This document shows, piece after piece, positions 24,808-55,093 of a DNA stretch of 64,000 bases (positions are counted from its first letter, which is position 1; the number at the start of each line of letters is the position of its first letter). The stretch is from positions 62,001-126,000 of the IMG/VR virus record IMGVR_UViG_3300028800_000001, one strand, 5' to 3'. The translations under genes and the position numbers were made by a program. The notes beneath the pieces were generated by a model that saw nothing but the letters and a program-made list of their open reading frames with translations, was not told the origin of the DNA and made no database searches.

Positions 24808-24850
24808 CGTTTTTCTCCTCAAATAACTTTCGTTTATTTCTTCTAGAGGA

Positions 24851-24904
24851 AGTATACCTGAGCGGAGAAAAAACGTCAAGGGTTATTTCTCTGTATTTTC
24901 AGAA
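24851..24904 (-). promoter_or_regulatory. promoter module P5
   Basis: TTCTGAAAATAC...TTGACG-N17-TATACT. Confidence 0.85.
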
Positions 24905-25023
24905 GGTCTTTGTTCGGGAAGCTGATCTGATTGTTCTAATTTGTCGAGCAATCTACGCAGAGCGCGTAGTGCCTGGGGATCGCAAATGCTTTTGATATAG
25001 GCTTGCAGTTCTTCTTCGGTCAT
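24883..25023 (-). CDS. small protein (46 aa, not in ORF track)
   Basis: AAGGAG SD; MTEEELQAY...PSENTEK; stop inside P5. Confidence 0.65.
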   Translation of the reverse strand: MTEEELQAYIKSICDPQALRALRRLLDKLEQSDQLPEQRPSENTEK

Positions 25024-25042
25024 CTCTTTTTCTCCTTTCTTC

Positions 25043-25399
25043 TTATAAGAATTCTGGCTTGCTTGACCAGAACATAATAGCGGGACTGTAGGGACCGATC
25101 ACCAGCGGTTGCACGCGCCCATCATCGCGCTTGAGTAAAAAGGTAGCCGCTTGTCCACGAATACCGGTACGAAAGCGTCGGTAGTAGAGCGTTGTCTTTC
25201 CACCGCTTTGCCGGTCAATAGCGGCCATGAACTTTTGTATCCACGCGTTGAAGTCATCGTTATTTTGATTGAACAACAGCGAGAATGCCTCAAAGATACG
25301 ATCCTCTGAGATACCTGCAAACAGGGGCTCTTGAAATTCGGCAAGGCTTTGCGCTGCCAGGGCAAACACATCTTCATAATCGCTTAGTTCTTCTCTCAT
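25043..25399 (-). CDS. hypothetical protein
   Basis: ATGA overlap. Confidence 0.7.
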   Translation of the reverse strand: MREELSDYEDVFALAAQSLAEFQEPLFAGISEDRIFEAFSLLFNQNNDDFNAWIQKFMAAIDRQSGGKTTLYYRRFRTGIRGQAATFLLKRDDGRVQPLVIGPYSPAIMFWSSKPEFL

Positions 25400-25743
25400 G
25401 CCTCTTCTCCTTCAAAAAACGAATCAAGTAGTAACGTAAAAAACTTCTTGTTGTTGTCAGCGACATCCATCCGCTCTAGTATCAGCGTTTCACTACTCAA
25501 TTTTCTGCCAGCAATCACGCCAATAGGAACGCCTTTTGTCTCTGAATCTGGCGGATATAAAAGTATCCAGAACTCTTTTTCAAGCTCCACGATAAAATCG
25601 AGAGCCGCAATAACTTGCGCGAAATCAGCATTATCGCATGCTACAAAGTGTCCTTCTGCTGCGCGACTATCCAGCCGAAAGGTATAGTCGCTCGCGAACA
25701 CGTGACTTGCCGATCTTAGACCTGACGCAGTTCTCGCTTTCAT
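25396..25743 (-). CDS. hypothetical protein
   Basis: GGGAG SD before MKART. Confidence 0.7.
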   Translation of the reverse strand: MKARTASGLRSASHVFASDYTFRLDSRAAEGHFVACDNADFAQVIAALDFIVELEKEFWILLYPPDSETKGVPIGVIAGRKLSSETLILERMDVADNNKKFFTLLLDSFFEGEEA

Positions 25744-25744
25744 T

Positions 25745-26137
25745 TTAGTAATCTCCCTGAAAAAACTCAAAGAGAAGATTATAGATTCTTTCACGTAGCA
25801 TACTCTGCATACTTACGGTCTCAATCATGATTGTGTAAGGATTTCTTTTTTCAAGTAGCAGCGCGCCAAGCGCGTTCTTATACAGCTTTCCTAGCATTAC
25901 CTCTTCTCGCCAAACATGTAGCGAGAACACATCACCGACCGAAACACCAAAATCTATTACTGAGATGACTTCCCCAAAGTCCATGCGCTCACCCAAGACG
26001 ATAGCGCCCACACTTATCTCAAAGCCATACGTCTCTGGAAATTGCTCACTCGCCTTCGCCAGATTCTCACTCGTTCTCTCCAGCAACGGCTTCCTCCTCC
26101 CATATGAGCCCCATACGTACTGAGGTATCGTACTCAT
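25745..26137 (-). CDS. hypothetical protein (start uncertain)
   Basis: ORF tiling. Confidence 0.6.
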   Translation of the reverse strand: MSTIPQYVWGSYGRRKPLLERTSENLAKASEQFPETYGFEISVGAIVLGERMDFGEVISVIDFGVSVGDVFSLHVWREEVMLGKLYKNALGALLLEKRNPYTIMIETVSMQSMLRERIYNLLFEFFQGDY

Positions 26138-26801
26138 CGCGTGGCATCCAGGTCGTTGTTGCAGGGCTGAGCACCGCAAGCAGTTCATCCGTTTCTCTGT
26201 CGTGAATGCGTAGCACAATTTCGTTTTCAGCCACGCCCACTACGTCAAAGCGGCACCTGTTATCCTGTTTCCAGAGCCCATACTCTGCTAGCAGCGTGCA
26301 AGAAACCCCAAAGAGATAGACGCACTTACCATGCTCTTCGTCTTCGAAGTCAAAATGGACATACTGAATCTGATCGCCTTTTTTATCCACTCGCGCTAGT
26401 GAAGAACACTCGATTGTACCACCAACCAGCTTTTCATCATCTTTTGTCTGAGTGGCAGCGCGCTGCCAGAGCGAACGCACCTTGTGAATTTCCATATACT
26501 TTTCGTCCACTGGCGTTTGAACAATATTAAACACCCAACATACAAGCGTGACATTACTGGCGATGCGCTTGCTCAAAAAGTTCCCAAGCCAGCCATCTTT
26601 CCAGGCTTCCTCATAGTGCACTTTAAATGCGCATTTGGAATCTTCGCAGTAAATGATGCAGTCGAAGCTTTCCAGGTCATCGCTCAGACGCTCCGTGACA
26701 TGCGTCTCTTTGCTGTAGATATGCCCATGTTGCGGATCATTTGTCGGACAAAGCATATCTGCAATATGCGCCGCAATGCAGTGTTTTTGTTGCGAGTCCA
26801 T
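26067..26801 (-). CDS. hypothetical protein
   Basis: AAGGAG SD. Confidence 0.8.
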   Translation of the reverse strand: MDSQQKHCIAAHIADMLCPTNDPQHGHIYSKETHVTERLSDDLESFDCIIYCEDSKCAFKVHYEEAWKDGWLGNFLSKRIASNVTLVCWVFNIVQTPVDEKYMEIHKVRSLWQRAATQTKDDEKLVGGTIECSSLARVDKKGDQIQYVHFDFEDEEHGKCVYLFGVSCTLLAEYGLWKQDNRCRFDVVGVAENEIVLRIHDRETDELLAVLSPATTTWMPRDEYDTSVRMGLIWEEEAVAGENE

Positions 26802-26825
26802 ACCTTCTCCTTAAAAAAGGACAGA

Positions 26826-27104
26826 TTAGAGCCTGTCCCATATGATAAATGTTGAAATAAGCGCTTTAATGAGCAGCCGCTCAGCCCGTGGATCGCTCCA
26901 ACTATTCCCTTTTCTCCACAAGATATTACCCTCTTGTTGCGTAAAACTATAGCCACCAAGAAAGTTCTCCTGATCAGCTTTGCGCACATAGATAGTGAGT
27001 TCCTGATGTGCGCCGCTTTGAAGCTGGTTGATAATTTCTGCAATCGTAGCACCTGTTAAAACGCGTTGCTGGTTGTTTTTGAGATCAAATCGATAGTTTC
27101 TCAT
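26826..27104 (-). CDS. hypothetical protein
   Basis: AGGAG SD. Confidence 0.7.
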   Translation of the reverse strand: MRNYRFDLKNNQQRVLTGATIAEIINQLQSGAHQELTIYVRKADQENFLGGYSFTQQEGNILWRKGNSWSDPRAERLLIKALISTFIIWDRL

Positions 27105-27116
27105 CTTTATTCTCCT

Positions 27117-27151
27117 AAAAAATAAAGGGAAGGGCTTGCGCCGCTTCCCCT
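27117..27151 (-). terminator. intrinsic terminator
   Basis: GGGAAGCGGC-GCAA-GCCCTTCCC then TTTATTTTTT. Confidence 0.75.
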
Positions 27152-27157
27152 GGTGAA

Positions 27158-27823
27158 TTAATGAACTTTCTTAATGCACTCGCTTCCGTACCCTCGATTG
27201 AGCGAGACCGGATTAGTGAGCATCCGGTTGCAGCGTCGGCAGTTTCCGCTCTCGCTTGCGTAGAGGATACCAGCGGCTTCTGCGTTCTCACCGTCCAGCA
27301 GATAATTGACGGCTGCGATCTCCTGCTGGTACAGCGCGTAGCGTTTCCACACCGCAAGTTTGTTTCCGTTTAAGAATGCGAACGTTTGATAGCTCTTCTC
27401 GTTGGTGTTATCGGTGCCCAGGAACACGGCGACCATCTGCTTCCCTTCGCCAAAACGCCCCTGCTTACCGGTGAAGATGCGGAAGGTCTTATGACGCTGC
27501 TCACCGTCGAAATCGAAGACCACCGTGTAATAGCCGTCGTGTAAAGCGGGTGCGACTGGTGCCTGCGGAGCGCTCGCTGCGGTAACGCGTGCCATTCTGG
27601 CGTCTTTTTCTTTTTGCAAGAGATTCGCGGTGAACGCTGCGGTTGCGGCGAGTGACGCTTTATAATCGTGGCATTTCTGCGACAGATTATGCGCAATTTT
27701 ATGCTCTGTCGGATAGTAGAGAACCGGATCACCAGCCGCGATCTTTTGTCCACAAAATTTACAGGTACCAGCGTACAACGCGTTAATTTGTTTGAAAGCC
27801 GGAAGCGTTTTCGAAGTGATCAT
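27158..27823 (-). CDS. DUF6011-like zinc-finger protein
   Basis: YAGTCKFCG N-terminus; CRRCNRMLTNPVSLNRGYGSEC C-terminus. Confidence 0.75.
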   Translation of the reverse strand: MITSKTLPAFKQINALYAGTCKFCGQKIAAGDPVLYYPTEHKIAHNLSQKCHDYKASLAATAAFTANLLQKEKDARMARVTAASAPQAPVAPALHDGYYTVVFDFDGEQRHKTFRIFTGKQGRFGEGKQMVAVFLGTDNTNEKSYQTFAFLNGNKLAVWKRYALYQQEIAAVNYLLDGENAEAAGILYASESGNCRRCNRMLTNPVSLNRGYGSECIKKVH

Positions 27824-27867
27824 TTTTTCTTTCTCCTTGAATGTTTTCGTTTATTTCTTATACACGA

Positions 27868-27922
27868 ATGATACGTCATTCAAGGAGAAACGTCAAGTGT
27901 TTTTTCTATGAATATTCAGAAA
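27868..27922 (-). promoter_or_regulatory. promoter module P6
   Basis: TTTCTGAATATTC...TTGACG-N17-TATCAT. Confidence 0.8.
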
Positions 27923-28625
27923 TGAAAGTATTCAATTGCTCCAGCATATCTTGCTTGCATATGTCGAGCACATCACCTGAAAGATCTGCCAGCGGCAAGC
28001 TCGGAATGCGTGCGATAAACATGCGTGCCACTGGAACATATTTTCGTGCGAGCGATGCACGCCGCTTTTCGTTTCCAATGGCGTCTAAGAAGAGTGCGTT
28101 GCCCATGAAATCAGCAAGCTTAATTCTGGCTGCGCCATCATCCTTGATCAGCTCTTGTACATGCGCCTGATACATACTGTGCGTAAGCGCCTGATACTCA
28201 TCACGGTCTGCATACGTGATACCATGCGCCTGCAAGAGTGCGTCATAATCAGGATTGCTCAGCGCTGCCACCAGATTGCGTACCCGTATGCCAAAGTAAG
28301 ATTGCAGCACTTCGAGAGCGCTTTCGCGTATATTTGGAGCACCAGGACGCGCAAGTTTTGCGGCCTGATCTTCCACGCTATCATGTAGAAGTGCGGCAAT
28401 CACTTCATCAGCAGACTCACCAATAAGTTTGAGCGCAACTTCAAGCGGATGTTGTACATATTCGCTGCCATCAAAGCGTCGAGCTTGATCGCCGTGAAGC
28501 AGAATCATCAAGTCTAGCGCCTGCGTAATACGCAATTCGTCTTGCAGGCTGTACATCTTGATTTCTCGTAAAAACCCCTGTTTTCGATGCAAAAACGCGG
28601 GGGAAGCCCCTTCTAAAGCATTCAT
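27906..28625 (-). CDS. HD-domain hydrolase, RelA/SpoT hydrolase (Mesh1/SAH)-like
   Basis: HGDQARR, YVQHPLEVA, AALLHDSVED, IKLAD..N. Confidence 0.85.
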   Translation of the reverse strand: MNALEGASPAFLHRKQGFLREIKMYSLQDELRITQALDLMILLHGDQARRFDGSEYVQHPLEVALKLIGESADEVIAALLHDSVEDQAAKLARPGAPNIRESALEVLQSYFGIRVRNLVAALSNPDYDALLQAHGITYADRDEYQALTHSMYQAHVQELIKDDGAARIKLADFMGNALFLDAIGNEKRRASLARKYVPVARMFIARIPSLPLADLSGDVLDICKQDMLEQLNTFISEYS

Positions 28626-28689
28626 CTTTTTTCTCCTTGAATTAATTAATTATTTTGTAACAATTTCCAAAAACATTTTTCTAAAATTA

Positions 28690-28744
28690 ATTATAGCGCA
28701 GCTTTTTAGCGAAGACAAGTATTTCTTCTATAGATATTCAGAAA
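28690..28744 (-). promoter_or_regulatory. promoter module P7
   Basis: TTTCTGAATATC...TTGTCT-N17-TATAAT. Confidence 0.8.
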
Positions 28745-28778
28745 ATAAAAGGGAGCCTCTCGAAAGAAGCCCCCCCCC
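28742..28778 (-). terminator. intrinsic terminator abutting P7
   Basis: GGGGGCTTCT-TTCG-AGAGGCTCCC then TTTTATTTT. Confidence 0.75.
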
Positions 28779-28807
28779 TTCACCTTTAATCGTCGTAGTG
28801 CGACACG

Positions 28808-28996
28808 TTACTTTGTTACCTCTACGTCTCCCAGTAGCGCGTCCAAGGTTTTGCGGCGTATCCGGTAGCCCTGGCGCTCGTTGACGTGTGGTAGTACCAC
28901 TGCCTCTAGCGCCCCTTGTTTAACCCAGCGGCGTACCGTTGTGTCATCCACGCGCAGAATATCGGCAACTTCCGAAATTGTCAGTAAATCACTCAT
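28808..28996 (-). CDS. excisionase-like helix-turn-helix protein
   Basis: LLTISEVADILRVDDTTVRRWVKQGALEA...YRI. Confidence 0.85.
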   Translation of the reverse strand: MSDLLTISEVADILRVDDTTVRRWVKQGALEAVVLPHVNERQGYRIRRKTLDALLGDVEVTK

Positions 28997-29387
28997 ACCT
29001 ATTTCCTCCAAAATCATCAGGAAGGTCTTCCTCTTGTTCGATAAGATAGACCTCACTTAGCAGACGAATATTATACCAATATTTCACAGCTTTTAATCGG
29101 TGTCGCCAAAGAGTACTTGCCGCGCATTCGACACATAGTGCGGTCGGCATAATTTGTTTGCAAAAATCAGAATAAGCCATACAATGATACGTTGGTGCCG
29201 CAACAAACGTGTTATGCCCCGCACACCAGTTTTCCGATTTTTCCTCTACCAGTATTTCTTCTCGTGAAAGTTCAAGCATAAATGGGCTCCTCTTCAAAAA
29301 AGAAGCCATCGCTGTCTCTCCCGTTACAGCGTAGATGATGGCTTCTTTCGCATATAGTTTCCTTATTCTACCCGATCCCCACCACAC
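28989..29387 (-). CDS. hypothetical protein (start uncertain)
   Basis: ORF tiling. Confidence 0.55.
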   Translation of the reverse strand: MWWGSGRIRKLYAKEAIIYAVTGETAMASFLKRSPFMLELSREEILVEEKSENWCAGHNTFVAAPTYHCMAYSDFCKQIMPTALCVECAASTLWRHRLKAVKYWYNIRLLSEVYLIEQEEDLPDDFGGNRYE

Positions 29388-29406
29388 TTGTCAATGTTTT
29401 TTCTGT

Positions 29407-30543
29407 TTATCTTCTGAAGAAGTCACGCAACCCGCGTTTGCCCTCGCGTGCTTCCTGTTTCGTGAGTGGTTTATTCTCCATCACTTTGCCAAGAACAATT
29501 AGTGCATTGCCAACATTGGGCTCATTGGTGATTACCGCATCAGGGGAACAGAAGTGCGCGATGTCAGCGATAGCCCCAGGACCATCAGTGCGAAAGCGTG
29601 TGCGATCCCACTCGGCAACGTCTAGCGTGGTGAAGTGCTCAACAAAAGTGCGCATATTAATCCACGCGCCTTCATAGATGCCAACGCGACCATCCTGGTG
29701 ATACCAGCCCTGGTCAGCGATTTGCCCTGCGGCCAGCATAACTTGCTCATGCAGTCTTGGAGACGGTGAAAGTGGTGCCCAGTGCCAGGACTCATACACA
29801 GTGATGCTCTCAGGAATAGGCAGATCATTGCCTATCTCGTTGTATTCTTTGCCATGCCAGAGCTTCACAGAACGGCTATTCCAGTAGTGATCGTAGGTAT
29901 CACGTACCTCAATAACGTCTTCGTCGTTGCGTGGTTCCATAAAACCATGACGATGATAGGCCATCTTGAGCACCTCTTTGCCGTTACGCTCGATGCGTTC
30001 GTAGTGTGCGCTGTGACTATCCAGGTAACTTTGTGCCTCTTCGGCTGAGAAGCTTCGATAGCCCTTACGATTGTACTCCGCAACCTCTGGGTAGAGGTAG
30101 AGCCAGCCAGCATCCGCGTCCCACTCCTGAGCAGCCAGGACAAGTTCAGGATCAAAGATGCCTTGTCGCTCATTCTTAAATTGGAACTCAACGCGACTGC
30201 CGTCCTTAATATCCAGGTACAAGATTGCGCCACATTTCTCACAGGTGTGCCCATGATAGCGCGTGCCTACGGTTGAAATGTACTCTTGGCACGAACCGCA
30301 CACAGCGCGGTTAAGATCTTGCAACGAGCAGTACCAGAGATAGCCTCCTGGTGCTTTGAGCATTGCTTCGGTGCTTGAATAATGTTTGGTATGCTCAGGA
30401 TCTTCGCGCATACTTTGCACTTTGTACTCGCTGTCGCGAAGCTCTTGCAAGAAGGGCTCCAACGACTCTGGGGCTGTTACATAGGCATGGTTTCCCAGCC
30501 AGACAACGTTGGGTGTCTTAATTTTCAATAAATCAGTGCTCAT
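29407..30543 (-). CDS. hypothetical protein with zinc ribbon (378 aa)
   Basis: CGSC...CEKC. Confidence 0.85.
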   Translation of the reverse strand: MSTDLLKIKTPNVVWLGNHAYVTAPESLEPFLQELRDSEYKVQSMREDPEHTKHYSSTEAMLKAPGGYLWYCSLQDLNRAVCGSCQEYISTVGTRYHGHTCEKCGAILYLDIKDGSRVEFQFKNERQGIFDPELVLAAQEWDADAGWLYLYPEVAEYNRKGYRSFSAEEAQSYLDSHSAHYERIERNGKEVLKMAYHRHGFMEPRNDEDVIEVRDTYDHYWNSRSVKLWHGKEYNEIGNDLPIPESITVYESWHWAPLSPSPRLHEQVMLAAGQIADQGWYHQDGRVGIYEGAWINMRTFVEHFTTLDVAEWDRTRFRTDGPGAIADIAHFCSPDAVITNEPNVGNALIVLGKVMENKPLTKQEAREGKRGLRDFFRR

Positions 30544-31392: not shown

Positions 31393-31395
31393 GTG

Positions 31396-34686: not shown

Positions 34687-35079
34687 TCACACATTTTCAG
34701 CGATGCCCACAAATTGCAGCACAAACTCCACAAACAAGGCAAAGAGTGTCATAAAGAACTGACCGCCCTGTTTTGCAAGTGTTTGCATACCTTGCGCACA
34801 GCGCGTGGTATCTTTCTTTTGTACGACCGTCAGCAGCAGATAGACTCCACCGATAAAGAGAAGAAAGGTGAGAAAGAGAAAAAGAATGGCGGCTGAAACC
34901 AGCGCGCCAAGGAGGAGAAGAAGACTCATACACAGTCCAGTAAGGGCATATTGCAAAATACGCCGCTGCGTTGCAAACGGCGTGAGTGTTTTTGTGGGAC
35001 GTTTCCTCAAGAAAAATTGCAGCAGTCCATAGCAGAGGAATAGCGTTGCAAGACCGGCAAAGATAAAAAGATATGGCAT
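34687..35079 (-). CDS. membrane protein
   Basis: 3-4 hydrophobic segments. Confidence 0.75.
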   Translation of the reverse strand: MPYLFIFAGLATLFLCYGLLQFFLRKRPTKTLTPFATQRRILQYALTGLCMSLLLLLGALVSAAILFLFLTFLLFIGGVYLLLTVVQKKDTTRCAQGMQTLAKQGGQFFMTLFALFVEFVLQFVGIAENV

Positions 35080-35210
35080 AGTTTCCTTCTAAAAATTTCT
35101 CTTTCTTTTCAGAAACTATGCCATAAGATCACGCTTTTGTCAAGAGATTTCGCTCATGCTTATTTTGCGAAGCGTAAGCGACGAATGGTATCAGATTTGC
35201 CTAAAGTAAG

Positions 35211-39235: not shown

Positions 39236-39268
39236 GTTTTTCTCCCTGCATTCTTTTTCAATACAGGA

Positions 39269-39323
39269 AGTATAGGTCGAAATAAAAAAGAAGTCAAGCA
39301 TTTTTTCTCTGTATTTTCAGAAA
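39269..39323 (-). promoter_or_regulatory. promoter module P9
   Basis: TTTCTGAAAATAC...TTGACT-N17-TATACT. Confidence 0.85.
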
Positions 39324-39341
39324 CGCTTAACTTCTTTTACG

Positions 39342-42468: not shown

Positions 42469-42669
42469 TTAGCGCTGTCCACGCGGGGCTTTTTTCGCAG
42501 AAAACAAGACCTGATCAAAGGCGACCCAATCGACATCCTCGCCCTGCTCTGGCGTACATCCACACCAGAACACGCCACCGGCTTTCGCTTGCTTCGTCAG
42601 ATCAATCAGCTCAAAAGGCTTCTGGCATTCACAACAGATCACCGTATTCTCTAACGTTACTTCGTTCAT
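42469..42669 (-). CDS. small Cys-containing protein
   Basis: TTCAAGGAG leader, first gene after P10. Confidence 0.7.
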   Translation of the reverse strand: MNEVTLENTVICCECQKPFELIDLTKQAKAGGVFWCGCTPEQGEDVDWVAFDQVLFSAKKAPRGQR

Positions 42670-42730
42670 CGTGCTTCTCCTTGAATTAATTATTTTTTCT
42701 TTTCTTGACGAAATTCATTTTCTAAAATTA

Positions 42731-42785
42731 ATTATACGGCAGGAAACACGAAAAGACAAGCGTTTTTTCTATGAATATTCAGAAA
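42731..42785 (-). promoter_or_regulatory. promoter module P10
   Basis: TTTCTGAATATTC...TTGTCT-N17-TATAAT. Confidence 0.8.
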
Positions 42786-42822
42786 AATAAAAAGAGGAGA
42801 GAAGATGTTGCACTTCTCTCCT
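42783..42822 (-). terminator. intrinsic terminator abutting P10
   Basis: AGGAGAGAAG/CTTCTCTCCT stem then CTTTTTATTTTT. Confidence 0.75.
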
Positions 42823-45615: not shown

Positions 45616-45656
45616 TTCTTTTCTCCTTGAAATAAAACTTTCTTCTTTACATCCTA

Positions 45657-45711
45657 AGCATAGCCGGTTGCAAGAAGAAAGTCAATATATTTTTCTATGT
45701 ATTTTCAGAAA
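45657..45711 (-). promoter_or_regulatory. promoter module P11
   Basis: TTTCTGAAAATAC...TTGACT-N17-TATGCT. Confidence 0.85.
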
Positions 45712-48215: not shown

Positions 48216-48539
48216 TTAGTTTTGAAAAAGTGGATGGCGGCTGAGACCGCACTGTTTTAATAGGTCTTCCCACTTCCCGTCGTTGCAGCCGCAAAATGAA
48301 CGGTCGCTAAAACTGTCGCTACGCGTCTTGGAAGCTTGCGTCATATACCAGAATTCGCTGTTGACGCTGCGTACATAATAATCGCCAAAGGCGGTATGTA
48401 GGACCGGAAGAACTTGATATGCAACCTGATTAAAACGAGTCATTTCGTCAGCAAGCGCTGCTCGTACTGCAAACATACGTGCTTTTTGTGCCTCTCGTGC
48501 TACGCGATTTGCGCGCTTTTCTGCCAGTGTGAGTGCCAT
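48216..48539 (-). CDS. hypothetical protein
   Basis: TTCAAGGAG leader, first gene after P12. Confidence 0.75.
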   Translation of the reverse strand: MALTLAEKRANRVAREAQKARMFAVRAALADEMTRFNQVAYQVLPVLHTAFGDYYVRSVNSEFWYMTQASKTRSDSFSDRSFCGCNDGKWEDLLKQCGLSRHPLFQN

Positions 48540-48592
48540 CTTTTTTCTCCTTGAAACGAAAGTTATTAAATTGTTTTTTCTTTACAAAAAGA

Positions 48593-48647
48593 AGTATAGG
48601 TCAGAGAAGAAAAGAAGTCAATAGTTTTTTCACTGTATTTTCAGAAA
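48593..48647 (-). promoter_or_regulatory. promoter module P12
   Basis: TTTCTGAAAATAC...TTGACT-N17-TATACT. Confidence 0.85.
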
Positions 48648-48703
48648 TGCTTTGACCTTTAAGAATACAGACGTAAAAGATGGGGAAATATCAAATGAGG
48701 GTG

Positions 48704-49051: not shown

Positions 49052-49111
49052 ACAATTGCGGCAAGGAAACCCTGTGCTTTTAAGCCAGGGAGGAATTGCC
49101 GTCTCTCCTCT

Positions 49112-50395
49112 CTAATAACTATAGCCATCGATTTTGTACAACGACTGACAATATCTATAGCTAATTCCTTCAGTAACTCCGTTTTTCGTTGCAATATTAA
49201 AGCTTCCGGTAGAGCGTATTGCAACCTTTCCAATGTATGTACCCGTCTTTTTCCCTTTTGTGATAATGGCTTTTACGATGTCACCGGTTTGAAAACCATG
49301 CACAACCTTTGCTTGCTTTGGCCCTGTTCTTGGGAAGCCAAAGCAATTCATTCTGCACATTTGTCTCGATCCATGCCCAATAGCTTTTATATGCAAAGGT
49401 TGAATATCTCTAAGCGATAGTATTTCAGGGGTACTTTTGCCTACACATACCGCATCAATCCAATGTTCTTTTGAAAGTTGCCTCAAAGAACGATTGTATT
49501 TTGTTAGTCCACCAGAGCCAACTTCAACAGGCAATCCAGCTTTCTTTAATTCCTCATATAATCGCCACCTTGTACTATTCACCGCAGCCGCATCTTTGAG
49601 CGGCTTCTTTAGTTGCGCAAGAATCTTATCCAGTCGCTTCTTGTCATGTTGCAAGAAATCCTGAATATCTTTCGTGTCTTTCTTTTTATTGCATGGTTCG
49701 CAAGCCAAACAAAGATTAGAGATTCGATCCGAACCGCCCTTTGATCTTGCTACTACATGCTCAATCTCCAGAGGCACATTCTCAGCGTCACAGTAACCGC
49801 ATTTTCGCTCCCATTTTTCTAATAGGTACTCTCTAATCTCATAGCCTTGCAGTGTACCTTGTTGATATTCAAATCCTGATATTTCTGGATTTTCCATTTT
49901 TTGCAGATCAAAGCGAACCAATTCTTGCGAGATAGCAACAAGGTTGCAAAGCAATCTCAGCTTTCTCATCCACGTAAGGATATTTTGTATTCTGCTCTCA
50001 AGCGATGGCGCTATCCAACCTTTCTTCTTGTTCCTACGATTAAGAAAACGTGGCTGACGATATCTTGTTTTTCTTTGTCTACGCGACCTTCGAATCATTT
50101 TCCTATCGGCAAGCGCTTTTCCAATAGTGTTCCCACGATGTTCAAGTTCTACGCCAAAGACAACTTCACCCGACTGATCATTTACAATGGCGATACCGGT
50201 TGTCTTTGAACCAGGATCAAGCTTTATTCGCAATGGCTCAACAATTGGATTATTTACTTCTCGTTTTAAGACGATTGTAAACGGATATCTTTTAAAAACG
50301 GCTGCTTTTCCTGAAGAGAGCAATCTCCTTGCTTCCCCTGGATGTACCGGATTTAGAATCTGTTTCTTCGTATCTAATACAAACACTTTTAACAT
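49112..50395 (-). CDS. iscB: RNA-guided endonuclease IscB
   Basis: PLMP-like VFVLD..LNPVHPGEARRLL..YPFTI; RuvC-I LDPGSK; RRSRR bridge helix; RuvC-II QELVRFD; HNH EIEHVV..GGSDRISNL..CN; RuvC-III HWIDA. Confidence 0.95.
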   Translation of the reverse strand: MLKVFVLDTKKQILNPVHPGEARRLLSSGKAAVFKRYPFTIVLKREVNNPIVEPLRIKLDPGSKTTGIAIVNDQSGEVVFGVELEHRGNTIGKALADRKMIRRSRRQRKTRYRQPRFLNRRNKKKGWIAPSLESRIQNILTWMRKLRLLCNLVAISQELVRFDLQKMENPEISGFEYQQGTLQGYEIREYLLEKWERKCGYCDAENVPLEIEHVVARSKGGSDRISNLCLACEPCNKKKDTKDIQDFLQHDKKRLDKILAQLKKPLKDAAAVNSTRWRLYEELKKAGLPVEVGSGGLTKYNRSLRQLSKEHWIDAVCVGKSTPEILSLRDIQPLHIKAIGHGSRQMCRMNCFGFPRTGPKQAKVVHGFQTGDIVKAIITKGKKTGTYIGKVAIRSTGSFNIATKNGVTEGISYRYCQSLYKIDGYSY

Positions 50396-50645
50396 TTTTT
50401 GCTCTTTCAAGCCTCCGCTTTCGCGGGTAATGGTCAACTCGACAATGTTACAAAACGGTTTTGTATGATTACTACACTGGCTTTACCCTTCCGCCTGTTT
50501 AATAGTAATCCGCAGAGGATAAGACTGTTGAAGCATCCTATCGTGCCTATATATTCGCTTTTAACGTAGATTTTCTTTCAAATCTGAGTCTGGTCAAATT
50601 GGTGGGCTCTCACAAGCCCCTGTGTTTTAATCAGGGGTATTTGAC
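50396..50645 (-). ncRNA. omegaRNA (HEARO-type) scaffold
   Basis: GTCAAATACCCC...TTGACCAGACTCAG...CTACGTT...GGATGC...CTCTGCG...TTAAACAG...CATTGTCGAG directly upstream of iscB. Confidence 0.85.
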
Positions 50646-50672
50646 ACTTCTTCTGACTGCGCGCCCCTGCCA

Positions 50673-51149: not shown

Positions 51150-51150
51150 G

Positions 51151-51627
51151 CTACTCCTCATCTTTCTTGAAAAAGCACGCTTCAACGAGCAGCGCTTCGT
51201 AGGCATCTGCATCGTTACTCCGTTTGTCTAAGAATGCCAGGATCTTTGGGTATTTGTCTTGCAAATACGCAATCGTTGCATCGTTGCCAAAGACCGCAAT
51301 AGTATGCCCAGGCAGAAAAGTCGTCGCCCAGGACATTTCTATCGTGTAAATTTCTGTCCTCGCAAAGAAGAAGATGCCGTGTTCGTCTTTTCGAAGCGTA
51401 TACCACTTCTTAATGAGCGAGAGCGGCATAAGTTCTCCTTCGCTCTCCGCAAGCTCCAAGCCGTCTAGAGTAAAGCGTACTGGCACATCCACGGTGTGTT
51501 CTTGCCCAAAGAAGTGCTCAAAATGATACACATCGCCGTAGCCAAAGTAGGCATGCACACCGGCTCTGCGAAGCGCCTCTCTTGCTTTGGGGTGAATGCT
51601 TGAAATGTTGGTCATGTTTGAATCCAA
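51151..51627 (-). CDS. hypothetical protein
   Basis: ORF tiling. Confidence 0.7.
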   Translation of the reverse strand: MDSNMTNISSIHPKAREALRRAGVHAYFGYGDVYHFEHFFGQEHTVDVPVRFTLDGLELAESEGELMPLSLIKKWYTLRKDEHGIFFFARTEIYTIEMSWATTFLPGHTIAVFGNDATIAYLQDKYPKILAFLDKRSNDADAYEALLVEACFFKKDEE

Positions 51628-51905
51628 TAATATTTGAATGGATGCTTGCCGTCATACCCATCAGGAACGCCGTTCACAAACATCTTGCCAGTAGAAAGTA
51701 TTGGGTAGTGCTCATCATTGAGAATGAAACGACTGTCGCCAGAATTTCCCTCAACAATCGAGAGCAACGTCTTGAGCGCAAATTGCTCCGAACAGCCAAA
51801 GCGGTTCGCCACCTCTTTTGTGGTCTCGCCATCAATCTCACCCTGCCAAACCGCATCGCAAATCGCTGTTTTGATGCGCGTTGCTTCTTCTCTGGAGAGT
51901 CTCAC
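51612..51905 (-). CDS. hypothetical protein, possible HTH
   Basis: TTKEVANRFGCSEQFALKTL; GGAGGTG SD. Confidence 0.7.
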   Translation of the reverse strand: MRLSREEATRIKTAICDAVWQGEIDGETTKEVANRFGCSEQFALKTLLSIVEGNSGDSRFILNDEHYPILSTGKMFVNGVPDGYDGKHPFKYYWIQT

Positions 51906-51913
51906 ATCACCTC

Positions 51914-52705
51914 CTATAAGAAGATATTACCGTTGTCGTCTTTGTAGGCCACAAAGCCATCATCCAGCATCTTGCGCCACTCTTCTTTGGTGGCTTTGAA
52001 GCTCCCAAAGGTCGTGCTATGAACTGCGCACCATGCGCAAAGCTCATCTAACGTGGCGAAAACAGGTGAACAAGGAGAACCTTCCGTGGTATCTTCCCAG
52101 AGCTGATACCCCTCACCTGTTGGCGGCTCTTCGGCTTCCCAGTTCTCGTAGCGTTCTTTATGTTCGGGCGTTGGAAACTGCGATCCATCGCCGCCACACT
52201 CAGGGCACAAATCGCTCTTGCCTTCACGTGCAAGTTTGGCTTTGATCACCGTGTGGCAATTAATGCTATCGTGTCCAATACCAATCTTTGCCCAATCATT
52301 GACCTCTTGAGGTGTTGGAATATATCCGTTCGTCTCTTTGAGCCAATAAGAGCTTTCCCCGCTCTTTTCCTGCTCTCGCAGCATTTCCCATTGTTCGTCT
52401 GTACGTGGGCGTCTGGTAAAATCGAAAAGCCTTCCATCATCAACAAGCGCTTGAATGTCGTCTTCGTCCAGGTGGTAGCACCACGCTTCGTCATTGTAGC
52501 GATACCCTTTTTCAATATACACCCAACGCGTGCGATCAAAGCCATGCCAACGATCACGCAGCGCTTTGCATTCAAGGCTCCACCCTTCGCCATCGCAGGC
52601 AGGACAATTGTACTCAGAGCTCCAATACTGATTAAGATACCCTTCCCAGGTCGTGTTTTGCGGCCAATCGAAATCCATCGGTACGCGTTTTAATAATCTT
52701 CCCAA
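51914..52705 (-). CDS. conserved phage protein with split DnaJ-like CxxCxGxG pair
   Basis: MGR..KRVPMDFDWP, CPACDGEG, CPECGGDG, GYQLWEDTTEGSPCSPVF. Confidence 0.8.
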   Translation of the reverse strand: MGRLLKRVPMDFDWPQNTTWEGYLNQYWSSEYNCPACDGEGWSLECKALRDRWHGFDRTRWVYIEKGYRYNDEAWCYHLDEDDIQALVDDGRLFDFTRRPRTDEQWEMLREQEKSGESSYWLKETNGYIPTPQEVNDWAKIGIGHDSINCHTVIKAKLAREGKSDLCPECGGDGSQFPTPEHKERYENWEAEEPPTGEGYQLWEDTTEGSPCSPVFATLDELCAWCAVHSTTFGSFKATKEEWRKMLDDGFVAYKDDNGNIFL

Positions 52706-52707
52706 AT

Positions 52708-52950
52708 TTATTCCTCAATTCGCAGTTTTGCAAGCGGAAATTTGACCGCTTCAAATTCGGTGGCAGTACAGATAAGTTCTGTCCCAATCTTTGCAAGTTC
52801 AACTTGTATGGCGTTTAAGCGTGGTGAATTTGTGCGCTCACCAGTAAGCCAGAGGTTGAGCGCTTCGTCAATGAGCGCATTGCGCTTACGCCAGTGGATA
52901 AAGGGAAAAAGCAACATTGTACCTCTCTTGAAAGCTATAAGTGGTCGCAT
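52708..52950 (-). CDS. hypothetical protein
   Basis: ORF tiling. Confidence 0.55.
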   Translation of the reverse strand: MRPLIAFKRGTMLLFPFIHWRKRNALIDEALNLWLTGERTNSPRLNAIQVELAKIGTELICTATEFEAVKFPLAKLRIEE

Positions 52951-53107
52951 ACGCTACACCATCGTTTTCCCAGGTGCCTGAAAGTTGTGCAACACCTGTG
53001 AGCGCTTGCTCTTTGGCATCTTCATCTTGTGAAAGCCAGAACAAGCGCGGAAACTTCTCGTAAAAATCGTGTACGAGCAAACTGAGTCCATGAAGTTCGC
53101 TATCCAT
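52886..53107 (-). CDS. hypothetical protein
   Basis: AAGGAGG SD before MDSELH. Confidence 0.6.
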   Translation of the reverse strand: MDSELHGLSLLVHDFYEKFPRLFWLSQDEDAKEQALTGVAQLSGTWENDGVAYATTYSFQERYNVAFSLYPLA

Positions 53108-53744
53108 TATATAATCCTCCTTCTTTACGTACTTGATTGCAGATGCAATCCCAAAACGGTGCGCCGTAATCCTCCGGCTCGTAGGCAACCCCACTACGCC
53201 AGGAACACTGACTACACCCGACATACTCCATGTCGTTCTCTACCTCCTCTACCAACGTCTTCGTTAGACACCAGGGGCAAAGGCTATAGAGGAGGCACGC
53301 TGTGCATTCGTTTTCATCCCATTCATCGCCGTAGCTGCTTTTCTCATATAAAATGCCTGTGCCACGACAGGTACGGCAATAATTGGGATGCGCGGCCTCA
53401 AAAGCCACTACTTCCTCCTTGCCATCCTGACATCCCTGGAGATGCTTCGCACATTCAATATCCATGCGAAAAGGAAACTCAAAGTGAACAGGAAGGTTAT
53501 AGCGCAGTGCAACCGCAACACAGTCATCCAGGTCACGCTCATCTCTGTTCACATCGCGCAGAAATTGTCGAATAAGTGCTGCGCGAGCACGTGTAAGCGT
53601 CTGATACGGAATTGCGACCCCCTCTTTTCGGTAGATGTACCAGACCTCCTGGCACGAGAAAAAGAGGTAATAGCACTGCGTAGGCGGATGATAAAAGGCA
53701 CGCCAGACCTCCGCCCACTCTCGAAACGCGACACCAATACTCAC
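53100..53744 (-). CDS. Cys-rich hypothetical protein
   Basis: CRTCRGTG, CTAC, CPWC, CSQC. Confidence 0.75.
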   Translation of the reverse strand: MSIGVAFREWAEVWRAFYHPPTQCYYLFFSCQEVWYIYRKEGVAIPYQTLTRARAALIRQFLRDVNRDERDLDDCVAVALRYNLPVHFEFPFRMDIECAKHLQGCQDGKEEVVAFEAAHPNYCRTCRGTGILYEKSSYGDEWDENECTACLLYSLCPWCLTKTLVEEVENDMEYVGCSQCSWRSGVAYEPEDYGAPFWDCICNQVRKEGGLYNG

Positions 53745-54133
53745 AGTTTTTCAATCCTGACGGCGTTCTCTGGAATACGCAGTTCACCATGCTTTTCCGA
53801 GAAGACAATAAGATAGCCGCGCTCCAGCAGCACGCCAGAAAGTGTCATCTGCTTGTCTGCGCGAATGAACAACGCCTTTCCTTCTGGCTTATGAAAGCTG
53901 ATGTCACGCAAGAAAGTCACCGTATGTGCGCCATCGGTATAATCAGGATCAACACACAGATGCCGGTCGTCTGGATGAATAAAGGAAAGGGACATCTCCC
54001 AATTCTCTTTGATATGCTCCACACCAGGATTGGTTGGAAGTAATCGCAGCGAAGCGCGCCTGCCACGTGTGAAAAGAAGTTCACAACGACGATAACGACC
54101 AGAGATTTTTGCGCGTACAATAGTGCTTTCCAT
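53741..54133 (-). CDS. hypothetical protein
   Basis: TTCAAGGAG leader, first gene after P13. Confidence 0.75.
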   Translation of the reverse strand: MESTIVRAKISGRYRRCELLFTRGRRASLRLLPTNPGVEHIKENWEMSLSFIHPDDRHLCVDPDYTDGAHTVTFLRDISFHKPEGKALFIRADKQMTLSGVLLERGYLIVFSEKHGELRIPENAVRIEKL

Positions 54134-54170
54134 TTTTTCTTTCTCCTTGAAAAATATATTTCTTTTCTAT

Positions 54171-54225
54171 AGTATAGGGCATTTACACTAACGCGTCAAG
54201 AATATTTTCACTGTATTTTCAGAAA
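54171..54225 (-). promoter_or_regulatory. promoter module P13
   Basis: TATTTTCTGAAAATAC...TTGACG-N17-TATACT. Confidence 0.85.
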
Positions 54226-54278
54226 ATAAAAAGAGAGAAGCGTTATGCCCCTCTCTTAATAAAACCCTTTCGGGGTTA
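54222..54278 (-). terminator. tandem hairpins/terminator abutting P13
   Basis: AACCC-CGAAA-GGGTT and AAGAGAGGGGC/GCTTCTCTCTT then TTTATTTT. Confidence 0.7.
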
Positions 54279-54992
54279 TTTAACTTCTTTGGCTTTCATA
54301 TCAAAATATGCGCCTGCTCGATAATATTTGCGCTCATCTTGTGCCTTTAAGAATTTCTCGTAGACCTCTTTGGCCTTTTGATACGACGTTGCCTCGATCA
54401 TCTGCTCTTCAAATTCCGGCTGCTTTTCGATAAAACAACGGAAGGTTTTGACCGGCTTTGGCGCTTTTTTGACGCGTGGGGTGGAAACCGTCTTTGGGGC
54501 TGGAATGGTGCGTCCTTCGCCAGCAGCGCGTGCCCATTCTACAACGCGCTGTTCCATCTCGACCAGATCCGCTTTTGCGAACCGGATGTTTCGCTCGTAT
54601 TCGTTAATCTTACCGCTGTGCGCGTATTCGTAGGTTCTTGGCATTCCAGAGGAGACGCGGTATCCGTAGCTCTTCGTGTCCAGGTCGGCTGGACGGTCGC
54701 ACACAATCTCTTTCCCTGACTGATAAGCGGATTTGTTAATCCACACGGAAAGCTGTGCAGGAGGATTGGCGACGAACTCTGCGAGTGCCTGTTCTTGAGC
54801 CGCGATGAAGTTTTTTACCACTTCGACAATCTCTTTTAAACGATCACAGGAGACCTGATACGGGACGTAACGCGCACCAGCGCAAGAAGCGGTCTGCCAT
54901 CCATACCCAGGACGGCTGTATCCGTGATGTGCAATCAGTCCACTCGCGGCGCGTACCGCTCTTCCGCATACCTGACAGGTTAACTTTTCCAT
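54276..54992 (-). CDS. conserved phage protein with N-terminal Zn-binding motif
   Basis: TCQVCGR..IAHHGY.RPG.GWQTASC.G. Confidence 0.8.
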   Translation of the reverse strand: MEKLTCQVCGRAVRAASGLIAHHGYSRPGYGWQTASCAGARYVPYQVSCDRLKEIVEVVKNFIAAQEQALAEFVANPPAQLSVWINKSAYQSGKEIVCDRPADLDTKSYGYRVSSGMPRTYEYAHSGKINEYERNIRFAKADLVEMEQRVVEWARAAGEGRTIPAPKTVSTPRVKKAPKPVKTFRCFIEKQPEFEEQMIEATSYQKAKEVYEKFLKAQDERKYYRAGAYFDMKAKEVK

Positions 54993-55038
54993 TTTCTTTC
55001 TCCTTGAATGTTTTTTTTCGTTTATTTCTTATACAGGA

Positions 55039-55093
55039 ATGATAGCGCATTCAGGGAGTGGCGTCAAGTGTTTTCTCTATGAGTTTTCAGAAA
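55039..55093 (-). promoter_or_regulatory. promoter module P14
   Basis: TTTCTGAAAACTC...TTGACG-N17-TATCAT; near copy of P6 and its leader. Confidence 0.8.

What the first reader, a model, noticed from the sequence alone, without database searches (positions are those of the whole stretch)
24808..55062. Promoter spacers co-vary as anti-Shine-Dalgarno sequences for their own downstream gene
Seen: the -35/-10 spacer is complementary to the RBS 35-60 nt downstream. P6 has a perfect 14-bp match (27877-27890 vs 27830-27843). P14 has 10/11 (55048-55058 vs 55000-55010). P5 has CGUUUUUUCUCC vs GGAGAAAAACG (24864-24875 vs 24808-24818). P10 has UCGUGUUUC vs GAAGCACGA. P11 has UUUCUUCUUG vs CAAGGAGAAA. 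P12 has about 12 bp with a bulge. Spacers track leader-specific bases (CACGA in P10, AAACG in P5). Most of these lack an upstream terminator. Established: T4 e, soc, 49 and I-TevI are silenced on read-through RNA by hairpins absent from transcripts of the proximal promoter. Inference: each module is translationally insulated, so its first gene is made only from its own promoter, which suits a shuffled cassette array.
Basis: partly seen in the sequence, partly recalled or inferred. Interest (0 to 1): 0.8.

Follow-up and report, generated by a model that had tools for sequence, protein, structure and literature searches.

The report
Phage promoters hiding their gene's ribosome site

Summary
The complementarity is real. 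Only some beat chance: P6 (perfect 14 bp) and P14 are robust, P5 and P11 marginal, and P10 and P12 match composition-matched shuffles.

The window lies in a 327,295-bp virus record with about 52 copies of one sigma-70-type promoter cassette. Among the 44 with a clear ribosome site, cognate promoter/ribosome-site pairing beats non-cognate pairing (permutation p about 0.001). Nine beat spacer shuffles at p<=0.01 (binomial 5e-10). Long perfect runs are 20-fold enriched over non-promoter genes.

The 3' arm prefers the Shine-Dalgarno/start region. A diverged relative phage has new promoters with the same pairing in different sequences.

Predicted cost of opening the ribosome site is 6-21 kcal/mol in read-through RNA, against 1-8 in promoter-initiated RNA. 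About three quarters of promoters show nothing, so "each module is insulated" is too broad.

The logic matches T4 e/soc/49/I-TevI and IS10 fold-back inhibition. It differs from PeSL promoter-terminators, which the genome also has. No transcript or translation data exist. Verdict: new variant of a known kind, moderate interest.

The parts
27868..27896 (-). P6 promoter: -35 TTGACG 27891-27896, 17-nt spacer, -10 TATCAT 27868-27873. A UP-like motif lies directly upstream, and the stop codon of the upstream ORF lies 9 nt before the -35.
27877..27890 (-). P6 5' arm (anti-Shine-Dalgarno), entirely inside the -35/-10 spacer: UUUCUCCUUGAAUG.
   Evidence: Perfect 14-bp inverted repeat I12. Spacer-shuffle p=0.001.
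27830..27843 (-). P6 3' arm, CAUUCAAGGAGAAA, covering the Shine-Dalgarno sequence. The start codon is at 27821-27823 and the gene at 27158-27823 (221 aa, DUF6011 C-terminus).
55039..55067 (-). P14 promoter (-35 55062-55067, -10 55039-55044). The 5' arm is at 55048-55058 in the spacer.
   Evidence: Spacer-shuffle p=0.001.
55000..55010 (-). P14 3' arm over the Shine-Dalgarno sequence. Start codon 54990-54992, gene 54276-54992 (238 aa).
24851..24879 (-). P5 promoter (-35 24874-24879, -10 24851-24856). The 5' arm at 24857-24876 runs from the -35 edge through the spacer, and the fold extends it over the -10.
   Evidence: Spacer-shuffle p=0.03.
24807..24829 (-). P5 3' arm: leader-specific bases plus GAGGAGAAAAACG, up to the A of the AUG (24805-24807). 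Gene 24565-24807 (80 aa).
35115..35143 (-). Its 5' arm at 35112-35125 is the end of the spacer, the -10 and 3 more nt.
   Evidence: I13, perfect 14 bp; long-RNA MFE -37.8, z -3.55
35072..35085 (-). 3' arm for the 35143 promoter. It covers the end of the Shine-Dalgarno sequence and the AUG of gene 34687-35079 (130 aa).
42731..42759 (-). P10 promoter (TTGTCT, 17 nt, TATAAT). The 5' arm core is at 42743-42751 and the 3' arm core at 42669-42677, reaching the A of the AUG. This is a weak case, and a real terminator lies upstream at 42795-42822.
   Evidence: Spacer-shuffle p=0.19.
45657..45685 (-). P11 promoter. Spacer bases 45671-45680 can pair with the Shine-Dalgarno region at 45620-45629, with one G.U. 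They pair perfectly (11 nt) with leader 45637-45647, so no closure of the ribosome site is predicted.
48593..48621 (-). P12 promoter. Pyrimidine-rich spacer 48600-48625 pairs with 48535-48555 through bulges and G.U pairs. This is not better than shuffles.
39242..39338 (-). P9 cassette. A composite terminator-promoter hairpin (39338-39321 with 39303-39286, U-run in the spacer) is combined with a second helix that closes the ribosome site. In that helix the 5' arm at 39270-39260 is the end of the -10 plus the discriminator, and the 3' arm at 39252-39242 is the Shine-Dalgarno region.
   Evidence: I3; z -4.8; z -4.9
28747..28778 (-). Intrinsic terminator directly before P7 (28718). Similar terminators precede P8 (34166-34199) and P13 (54231-54257). 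These promoters have no anti-Shine-Dalgarno spacer.

Best explanation
This is translational insulation of a cassette's first gene from read-through transcription, present in a subset of cassettes. The phage carries about 50 copies of a strong sigma-70-type promoter cassette: a UP-like motif, TTGACN, 17 nt, TATACT, a short leader and an AAGGAG-type ribosome site. In about a quarter of them, the sequence just upstream of the predicted start site is the reverse complement of that cassette's own Shine-Dalgarno/start region. This sequence is usually the 17-nt spacer. It sometimes includes the -35, a few bases 5' of it, or the -10 and discriminator. RNA polymerase starting at the cassette's promoter makes an mRNA without the 5' arm, so the ribosome site is open. 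RNA made from an upstream promoter carries both arms and folds into a 9-20-bp helix that buries the site. The upstream ORF usually stops 3-19 nt before the -35 with no terminator. The first gene is therefore translated essentially only from its own promoter's transcripts. Shown here: the complementarity, its cognate specificity, its preference for the ribosome site, its occurrence in different sequences in a related phage, and the predicted folds. Inferred: promoter activity and start sites, the existence of read-through RNA, and the translational block itself. A possible extension, also inferred, is that the untranslated read-through RNA becomes a target for Rho-dependent termination, which would insulate the whole cassette.
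For: Cognate against non-cognate duplex energies give z -3.3, p about 0.001, and five promoters are best in both the row and the column of the 44x44 matrix where about 0.5 is expected. Seven kinds of control are null, and 353 non-promoter genes show no cognate signal. Spacer shuffles: 9 of 44 at p<=0.01, binomial 5e-10. Perfect helices occur in unrelated sequences: 14 bp at genome 252900 and at P6, 13 bp at 60656 including the -35, 12 bp at 7289, 11 bp at 254640, 14-15 bp at window 35143. Bases 5' of the -35 pair with the start codon at 254640 and 221720. In an unbiased search of the whole downstream 100-160 nt, 7 of the 12 best partners overlap the Shine-Dalgarno core, against 1.95 expected (p 0.002). 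Mean ribosome-site opening cost is 7.3 kcal/mol in long RNA, 3.0 in short RNA and 5.5 in long RNA with a shuffled spacer region. With cognate upstream sequence it is 7.23, and with chimeric upstream sequence 5.72 (Wilcoxon 0.017). Of the 11 strongest cases, 10 lack an upstream terminator. Strong helices occur in 9 of 20 promoters abutted by an upstream ORF, against 2 of 24 others (Fisher 0.012, post hoc). A diverged relative in a sibling metagenome has new promoters with leader-specific helices, L028 at -17.5 and L030 at -20.5 kcal/mol, each at or near the best of 50 alternative partners. The orthologue of 60656 (L040, 86% identity) keeps its helix. The precedent is experimentally established for T4 e, soc, 49 and I-TevI (PMC3014915).
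Against: There are no transcript, start-site or translation data, and no RNA run could be listed. About 30 of 44 promoters lack the feature, and many of these also lack a terminator, so insulation is not a general need. The either-terminator-or-helix pattern is not significant. G.U against A.C inside the helices is 4:4, giving no strand signal. Whole-segment MFE z-scores are unremarkable for P14, P10 and P5 at -0.5, -0.6 and -1.1. Two long helices end just upstream of the Shine-Dalgarno sequence, at 222725 and P11. Only the first gene would be affected, because later genes in a cassette have their own ribosome sites. The upstream promoters are of the same class, so the early/late rationale of T4 is missing. 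P6, 154050, 217321 and P14 have related spacers, so they are not four independent events.
Confidence: 0.55

Rival explanations
1. The hairpin acts on read-through RNA at the level of transcription or RNA fate, not translation. It would be a conditional terminator, attenuator or processing site that own-promoter transcripts escape because they lack the 5' arm. This is the PeSL logic of a composite promoter and stem-loop.
For: PeSL stem-loops overlapping sigma-70-like early promoters terminate upstream transcription in RB49/phi1 (PMC2839356). This genome has a clear composite terminator-promoter at P9. The 12-bp helix at genome 7289 is followed by a U-rich tail.
Against: In most strong cases the 3' arm is followed by an A-rich stretch and the AUG, not a U-run. 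Loops are 14-80 nt and contain the -10 and the start site, which is unlike intrinsic terminators. The 3' arm is placed on the Shine-Dalgarno/AUG far more often than chance, and a terminator would not require that. RB49 promoters show no spacer-to-ribosome-site pairing.
Confidence: 0.15
2. Chance plus composition: pyrimidine-rich spacers will pair with any purine-rich ribosome site, and the long matches are accidents or shared ancestry of duplicated cassettes.
For: Non-cognate spacer/ribosome-site energies (-9.2) are already stronger than those for upstream-shifted windows (-6.9 to -7.7). P10 and P12 are no better than shuffles. Chimeric upstream regions also raise the opening cost, to 5.7 against 3.0. 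Four spacers are homologous.
Against: The permutation test, the shuffle test and the Watson-Crick run tests all reject it for the class. Perfect 11-14-bp helices occur in unrelated sequences, and again in a relative.
Confidence: 0.1
3. A DNA-level feature: an inverted repeat bracketing the -10 and the start site that serves as a protein-binding or cruciform element, or a neutral product of template-switch (quasipalindrome) mutation.
For: G.U and A.C occur equally inside the helices (4:4), so nothing favours RNA of one strand. Several repeats are perfect, as template switching would make them.
Against: The arm sequences differ between promoters, so no single DNA-binding protein could read them. 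One arm is consistently the ribosome site. Non-promoter genes lack such repeats.
Confidence: 0.1
4. Translational coupling: on read-through RNA the ribosome finishing the upstream ORF melts the 5' arm and so licenses translation of the next gene.
For: The upstream stop codon lies 3-19 nt before the -35 in 9 of the 11 strong cases. In four of them the 5' arm starts 7-8 nt after the stop, within reach of a terminating ribosome.
Against: In the others the arm starts 12-24 nt, and in one case 89 nt, after the stop. The ribosome site is 40-100 nt further on, so the helix would re-form. A promoter between the two genes is then unexplained.
Confidence: 0.08

Closest known systems
T4 genes e, soc, 49 and I-TevI: ribosome-site hairpins on read-through transcripts, with a proximal promoter inside the region that encodes the 5' strand
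   Same: A helix buries the Shine-Dalgarno sequence and/or the AUG on long RNA. The proximal promoter's transcripts start after the 5' arm and are translatable. For gene e the effect is about 100-fold (PMC3014915).
   Different: In T4 the proximal promoter is a late (or middle) promoter and the silenced RNA is early, so the device is a timer. Here both the proximal and the upstream promoters are of the same sigma-70-like class. The 5' arm sits in the -35/-10 spacer, which T4 late promoters do not have. The device recurs in at least 11 cassettes of one genome.
IS10/Tn10 fold-back inhibition (Davis, Simons and Kleckner 1985, Cell 43:379)
   Same: A mobile unit protects its first gene from outside transcription. 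Transcripts entering from outside contain a segment that pairs with the ribosome site, and transcripts from the resident promoter lack it. The mechanism as described here is from my own knowledge; the reference and the sequestration of translation signals are cited in PMC13181058.
   Different: That is a single transposase gene in an insertion sequence. Here there are many unrelated small phage genes behind a repeated promoter cassette, and mobility of the cassettes is not shown.
PeSLs (promoter-early stem-loops) of T4-like phages RB49, phi1, PST and nt-1
   Same: Both are repeated strong sigma-70-like early promoters in front of ORFans, with a stem-loop overlapping the promoter. The proposed purpose is to stop distal promoters from over-expressing downstream genes (PMC2839356, PMC4122927). 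P9 in this window is a good PeSL-like composite terminator-promoter.
   Different: PeSL stems are compact, often G/C tracts, lie within the promoter and terminate transcription. The PeSL paper mentions neither translation nor ribosomes. Among 22 RB49 promoters I found no cognate spacer-to-ribosome-site pairing (z +0.8). Here the 3' arm is the ribosome site itself, 14-80 nt away, and usually has no U-run. The phage is not T4-like: its portal is 44% identical at best to portals of Bacillus-group siphophages.

Membership tests
Promoter-in-hairpin translational silencing (T4 e/soc/49/I-TevI type) | An RNA helix includes the Shine-Dalgarno sequence and/or the start codon on the longer transcript. 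| tested here: met
   Predicted only. MFE and centroid folds contain the helix for P6, P14, P10, P5 and the 35143 promoter. Opening cost is raised 3- to 10-fold over short RNA in about 11 promoters.
Promoter-in-hairpin translational silencing (T4 e/soc/49/I-TevI type) | The proximal promoter is placed so that its transcripts lack the 5' arm. | tested here: inconclusive
   By sequence, the 5' arm ends before the -10, or within 3 nt after it, in all strong cases. Start sites are not mapped. P9 depends on the exact start site.
Promoter-in-hairpin translational silencing (T4 e/soc/49/I-TevI type) | Upstream transcripts actually read through, and translation differs between long and short RNA. | not testable with these tools
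   No RNA run was listed. Read-through is inferred from missing terminators in 10 of 11 strong cases.
Promoter-in-hairpin translational silencing (T4 e/soc/49/I-TevI type) | The two promoters belong to different temporal classes, so the device works as a timer. | tested here: not met
   The upstream neighbours are the same promoter family, for example P7 feeding into P6. Other promoter classes of this phage are unknown.
PeSL composite promoter-terminator | A repeated sigma-70-like early promoter sits upstream of ORFans in plastic regions. | tested here: met
   There are 52 copies genome-wide and 18 in the window, mostly before small genes without family matches. A relative shares the promoters but not the flanking genes.
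PeSL composite promoter-terminator | A compact stem-loop lies within or beside the promoter and acts as a terminator. | tested here: not met
   This fails for the anti-Shine-Dalgarno cases: loops are 14-80 nt, the 3' arm is the ribosome site and the tail is A-rich. It is met for P9, and separate terminators precede P7, P8, P10 and P13.
IS10-type fold-back inhibition | The unit is a mobile element whose own promoter lies downstream of the inhibitory 5' segment. | tested here: inconclusive
   The geometry is met. Mobility of the cassettes was not tested; only about 76-86% identity between cassette copies was seen.
Intrinsic (Rho-independent) terminator | A G+C-rich hairpin with a short loop is followed immediately by a U-run. 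| tested here: not met
   None of the helices at P5, P6, P10, P14 or the 35143 promoter appears in the terminator scan. Only genome 7289 has a U-rich tail.

The most novel reading that the evidence does not exclude
The promoter cassettes of this phage lineage are self-insulating expression units. The 17 free bases of the -35/-10 spacer, or neighbouring bases upstream of the start site, are used as an evolvable anti-ribosome-site sequence. A cassette can then be dropped behind any transcribed gene without a terminator, and its first gene still answers only to its own promoter. Composite terminator-promoters (P9) and plain terminators are the alternative solutions in the same genome. If untranslated read-through RNA is then cut off by Rho, the whole cassette would be insulated. 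This would be a general design rule for ORFan cassette arrays in large phages, and it was not found in the PeSL archetype RB49.
Probability: 0.3. Interest if true: 0.7.

Novelty: new variant of a known kind. Interest (0 to 1): 0.5.

Why it matters
If the prediction holds, terminator-free arrays of strong early promoters can still give gene-by-gene control. Control would come from making translation, not transcription, depend on where the RNA started. That would extend a mechanism known from single T4 late genes and from IS10 to a repeated, cassette-borne device in a jumbo phage. It would also add a second solution, beside PeSL terminators, to the problem of cumulative read-through in ORFan arrays. 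It gives compact natural parts (promoter, anti-ribosome-site and ribosome-site within about 100 nt) that could be tested directly as genetic insulators. It also cautions annotators: in such genomes transcript abundance over a gene need not predict its translation.

Tried and rejected
1. Transcript evidence. No RNA run was listed. The DNA runs are rhizosphere metagenomes. Laying four of them on 24000-29999 gave only short low-depth contigs and cross-mapping from paralogous cassettes, with no informative variant in the P5 or P6 arms.

2. Relatives for covariation.
- Megablast against phages found nothing.
- The IMG/VR pattern scan gave only 99.9%-identical fragments.
- A protein-based scan gave one 23%-identical locus that I did not use.
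- The portal protein has no close cultured relative.
- The bacterial-genome scan gave three unrelated chance or MAG hits.
- Only the metagenome scan helped.

3. Strand of folding from G.U against A.C counts: 4:4, uninformative.

4. Raw duplex energies of promoters against windows upstream of non-promoter genes showed no difference. I set this aside as confounded by the higher G+C of coding windows. The cognate test and the run-length test on the same genes were the usable controls.

5. The pattern 'either a terminator or an anti-Shine-Dalgarno helix' has the right direction but is not significant.

6. An antisense-strand terminator reading was rejected, because the T-run lies 9 nt from the stem and the loop is 33 nt.

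7. RB49 was used as a test of PeSL identity. Its first 50 kb showed no signal; the rest of the genome was not scanned.

8. Two 13-bp repeats at genome 262140 and 263225 looked like further cases, but they are terminators of minus-strand genes.

Full report
CONTEXT

The window is bases 62001-126000 of a 327,295-bp IMG/VR virus record with direct terminal repeats (46.6% G+C), assembled from a rhizosphere metagenome. No cultured relative was found. Megablast against phage records found nothing. The 960-aa portal/head-morphogenesis fusion protein is at best 44% identical to portals of Bacillus-group phages. All genes in the window are on the minus strand, so every promoter, leader and arm below is read on that strand.

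THE PROMOTER FAMILY

A conserved cassette recurs about 52 times in the genome and 18 times in the window. It consists of:
- a UP-like motif (TTCTGAAAATACAGAGAA or TTCTGAATATTCATAGAA);
- about 7 variable bases;
- TTGACN (sometimes TTGTCT);
- a 17-nt spacer;
- TATACT or a close variant;
- a 20-80-nt leader, which in one subfamily contains AAGAAATAAACG;
- a strong ribosome site, often ATTCAAGGAGAAA;
- the start codon.

The simple consensus scan finds the same sites.

CHECKING THE OBSERVATION

All six quoted matches exist at the quoted coordinates.
- P6 is a perfect 14-bp inverted repeat.
- P14 is 10 of 11.
- P5 is 11 bp with a one-base bulge, and the fold extends the helix across the -10.
- P10 is 9 bp with one G.U.
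- P11 is 10 bp with one G.U.
- P12 is a bulged pyrimidine/purine pairing.

The 17-nt spacer alone was shuffled 1000 times, and RNAduplex scored the promoter segment (from 6 nt 5' of the -35 to the spacer end) against the region from -22 to +6 around the start codon.

| Promoter | Shuffle p |
|---|---|
| P6 | 0.001 |
| P14 | 0.001 |
| P5 | 0.03 |
| P11 | 0.048 |
| P10 | 0.19 |
| P12 | 0.27 |

In full folds the P11 spacer prefers a perfect 11-nt partner earlier in its own leader, and its ribosome site stays open.

So two of the six are robust, two are marginal, and two are what a pyrimidine-rich spacer facing a purine-rich ribosome site gives by composition.

THE CLASS-LEVEL TEST

I used the 44 promoters genome-wide that have a clear ribosome site and start codon within 90 nt.
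- Cognate pairing averages -10.45 kcal/mol against -9.24 for non-cognate pairs (permutation z -3.3, p about 0.001).
- Five promoters are the best partner in both the row and the column of the 44x44 matrix, where about 0.5 is expected.
- No signal appears in any control: the direct-repeat analogue, the reversed partner, four windows inside the coding region, or promoter segments shifted 30, 60 or 90 nt upstream.
- Nine of 44 promoters beat their spacer shuffles at p<=0.01 (binomial 5e-10).
- 353 strong-ribosome-site genes without a promoter show no cognate signal at all (difference 0.04 kcal/mol). Only 2 of them have a contiguous Watson-Crick run of 9 or more, against 6 of 44 promoters (Fisher 3e-5).

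The distribution is bimodal. About 11 cassettes have strong helices and about 30 have none.

The best cases lie outside the window and are clearly leader-specific:
- genome 252900, a perfect 14 bp with a 14-nt loop holding the -10;
- 60656, 13 bp that use the -35 hexamer itself and run up to the AUG;
- 217321, about 19 bp with two G.U and a bulge across an 80-nt loop;
- 254640 and 221720, where bases 5' of the -35 pair with the start codon;
- 7289, a perfect 12 bp.

P6 is not leader-specific. Its spacer is the complement of the family-consensus ribosome site. P6, 154050, 217321 and P14 have related spacers, so they are not independent events.

WHERE THE 3' ARM FALLS

I searched the whole 100-160 nt downstream of each promoter without prior assumptions. 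Seven of the 12 best complementary segments overlap the Shine-Dalgarno core, against 1.95 expected (p 0.002). The exceptions are 222725 and P11, whose partners lie just upstream of the Shine-Dalgarno sequence.

The principle is not confined to spacers.
Its spacer end, -10 and three further bases form a perfect 14-15-bp helix with the end of the ribosome site and the AUG of gene 34687-35079. The long-RNA MFE is -37.8 kcal/mol, z -3.55.
- At P9 the end of the -10 plus the discriminator pairs with the ribosome site.
- At genome 18730 a perfect 12-nt anti-Shine-Dalgarno sequence lies upstream of the UP-like motif.

PREDICTED CONSEQUENCE

The free energy needed to open positions -14 to +3 around the start codon was computed for three RNAs: one starting 60 nt upstream of the -35 (long), one starting at the predicted start site (short), and the long RNA with the promoter segment shuffled.

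| Promoter | Long | Short | Long, shuffled |
|---|---|---|---|
| Mean of 44 | 7.3 | 3.0 | 5.5 |
| 60656 | 20.7 | 3.7 | 5.5 |
| 252900 | 15.9 | 2.6 | 5.1 |
| P6 | 13.4 | 2.2 | 3.6 |
| P10 | 9.6 | 2.3 | 4.9 |
| P5 | 7.7 | 2.1 | 5.2 |
| P14 | 5.8 | 0.9 | 2.4 |

All values are in kcal/mol. Long against shuffled differs at p 4e-4.

Replacing the upstream part with that of another promoter lowers the cost from 7.23 to 5.72 kcal/mol (Wilcoxon 0.017). MFE and centroid structures of the long RNAs contain the helix. The P6 short RNA is essentially unstructured. Whole-segment MFE z-scores are unremarkable except for P6 and the 35143 promoter, so the signal lies in the specific helix, not in general foldedness.

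UPSTREAM CONTEXT

Ten of the 11 strongest cases have no upstream terminator. In nine of them the stop codon of the upstream ORF lies 3-19 nt before the -35, so RNA from the upstream gene must run into the cassette. For example, P7 feeds straight into P6.

Strong helices occur in 9 of 20 promoters abutted in this way, against 2 of 24 others (Fisher 0.012). That classification was made after seeing the data.

Nine promoters have compact terminators just before the UP-like motif, among them P7, P8, P10 and P13. Only P10 is among the strong-helix set, and this is not significant.

P9 carries a 17-bp hairpin that encloses the UP-like motif. Its 3' arm is the -35, and it is followed by the U-run of the spacer (z -4.8). 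This is a composite terminator-promoter of the PeSL kind.

The genome therefore shows three states: a terminator, an anti-ribosome-site helix, or neither.

INDEPENDENT REPLICATE

The metagenome scan recovered short contigs of a diverged relative from a sibling sample.
- L040 is 86% identical across the 60656 locus and keeps the helix, with a one-base insertion forming a bulge.
- L028 and L030 flank genes with no similarity to this genome, yet have leader-specific helices of 11 bp (-17.5 and -20.5 kcal/mol). L030 is the best of 50 alternative partners in both row and column; L028 is best in its row, with one better in its column.
- L042 is moderate.
- L024, L025 and L027 have none.

The fraction is about the same as in the main genome.

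WHAT COULD NOT BE SETTLED

No RNA run was listed. The laid DNA contigs were uninformative. Promoter activity, start sites, read-through and translation are therefore all inferred. G.U and A.C occur equally inside the helices (4:4), so sequence alone does not show that the sense RNA is the folding species. That conclusion rests on where the arms sit relative to the start site and the ribosome site.

COMPARISON WITH KNOWN SYSTEMS

The logic is that of T4 e, soc, 49 and I-TevI. There the ribosome site is buried on longer transcripts, and a proximal late promoter lies in the region encoding the 5' strand, so late transcripts are translated. For gene e the difference is about 100-fold (PMC3014915).

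It is also the logic of IS10 fold-back inhibition against outside transcription (Davis, Simons and Kleckner 1985, cited in PMC13181058). The mechanism itself is from my own knowledge.

It differs from T4 in three ways:
- both promoters are of one class, so it is not a timer;
- the 5' arm uses the -35/-10 spacer;
- the device is repeated across many unrelated small genes.

It shares setting and purpose with PeSLs, but not mechanism. PeSL stems are compact terminators, and the PeSL paper mentions neither translation nor ribosomes. Among 22 sigma-70-like promoters in the first 50 kb of RB49 I found no cognate pairing (z +0.8).

VERDICT

In the window that means P6, P14, the unlisted 35143 promoter and, more weakly, P5 and P9.

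The best explanation is translational insulation of the first gene of a cassette from read-through RNA (confidence 0.55). The rivals and their confidences are:
- a conditional terminator or processing site, 0.15;
- composition or chance, 0.10 for the class, though likely for P10 to P12;
- a DNA-level repeat, 0.10;
- translational coupling, 0.08.

It is a new variant of a known kind, with interest 0.5.

Noticed in passing
window 49112-50645 (-): A HEARO RNA (Rfam RF02033, 136 bits, full length) lies at 50427-50645, directly upstream of a 441-aa ORF with RRXRR (1.9e-69) and HNH domains. This is an IscB/omega-RNA-like (HEARO) element inside a jumbo phage early region.
   Followed up: partly
window 15183-15246 (-) and 60009-60062 (-): The family promoters at 15279 and 60094 are followed not by a ribosome site but by strong structures. 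One is a 64-nt hairpin with a U-run (z -3.5) that contains UUCUCCUUGAAU, the complement of the common ribosome site. The other is a 15-bp 5' hairpin (z -5.9). These are candidate small RNAs or structured leaders.
   Followed up: partly
window 27900-27927, 42763-42790 and every family promoter: The conserved UP-like motif is itself an inverted repeat (TTCTG..CAGAA). It is a near-perfect 16-18-bp palindrome in the TTCTGAATATTCATAGAA variant. It could be the binding site of a dimeric regulator instead of, or as well as, a UP element.
   Followed up: no
window 29285-29348 (-): The leader behind the 29394 promoter has a perfect 12-bp hairpin ending in a U-run, and an alternative hairpin that covers the GAGGAG ribosome site. 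It looks like a leader attenuator with two competing folds.
   Followed up: no
genome 153064-153140 (-), outside the window: A perfect 20-bp hairpin occludes a GAGGAG ribosome site just after a terminator. A 14-codon leader ORF starts in the 5' arm and stops inside the 3' arm, which suggests opening by leader-peptide translation.
   Followed up: no
window 7875-7913 (-): The P1 spacer is complementary (12 of 13) to P1's own UP-like motif, forming a hairpin with the -35 in the loop. This is another PeSL-like arrangement.
   Followed up: no
window 28690-28718, 42731-42759; genome 264413, 302976: A promoter subfamily (TTGTCT, 17 nt, TATAAT) has a long AT-rich leader. Its 5' end (TAATTTTAG) pairs with AATAATTAATT next to the ribosome site on the promoter's own transcript. 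Three of the four copies have a terminator upstream.
   Followed up: no
genome 205274 and 209867 (-), outside the window: Two family promoters appear to drive tRNA-like sequences rather than proteins. This was read from the sequence only; no tRNA scan was run.
   Followed up: no
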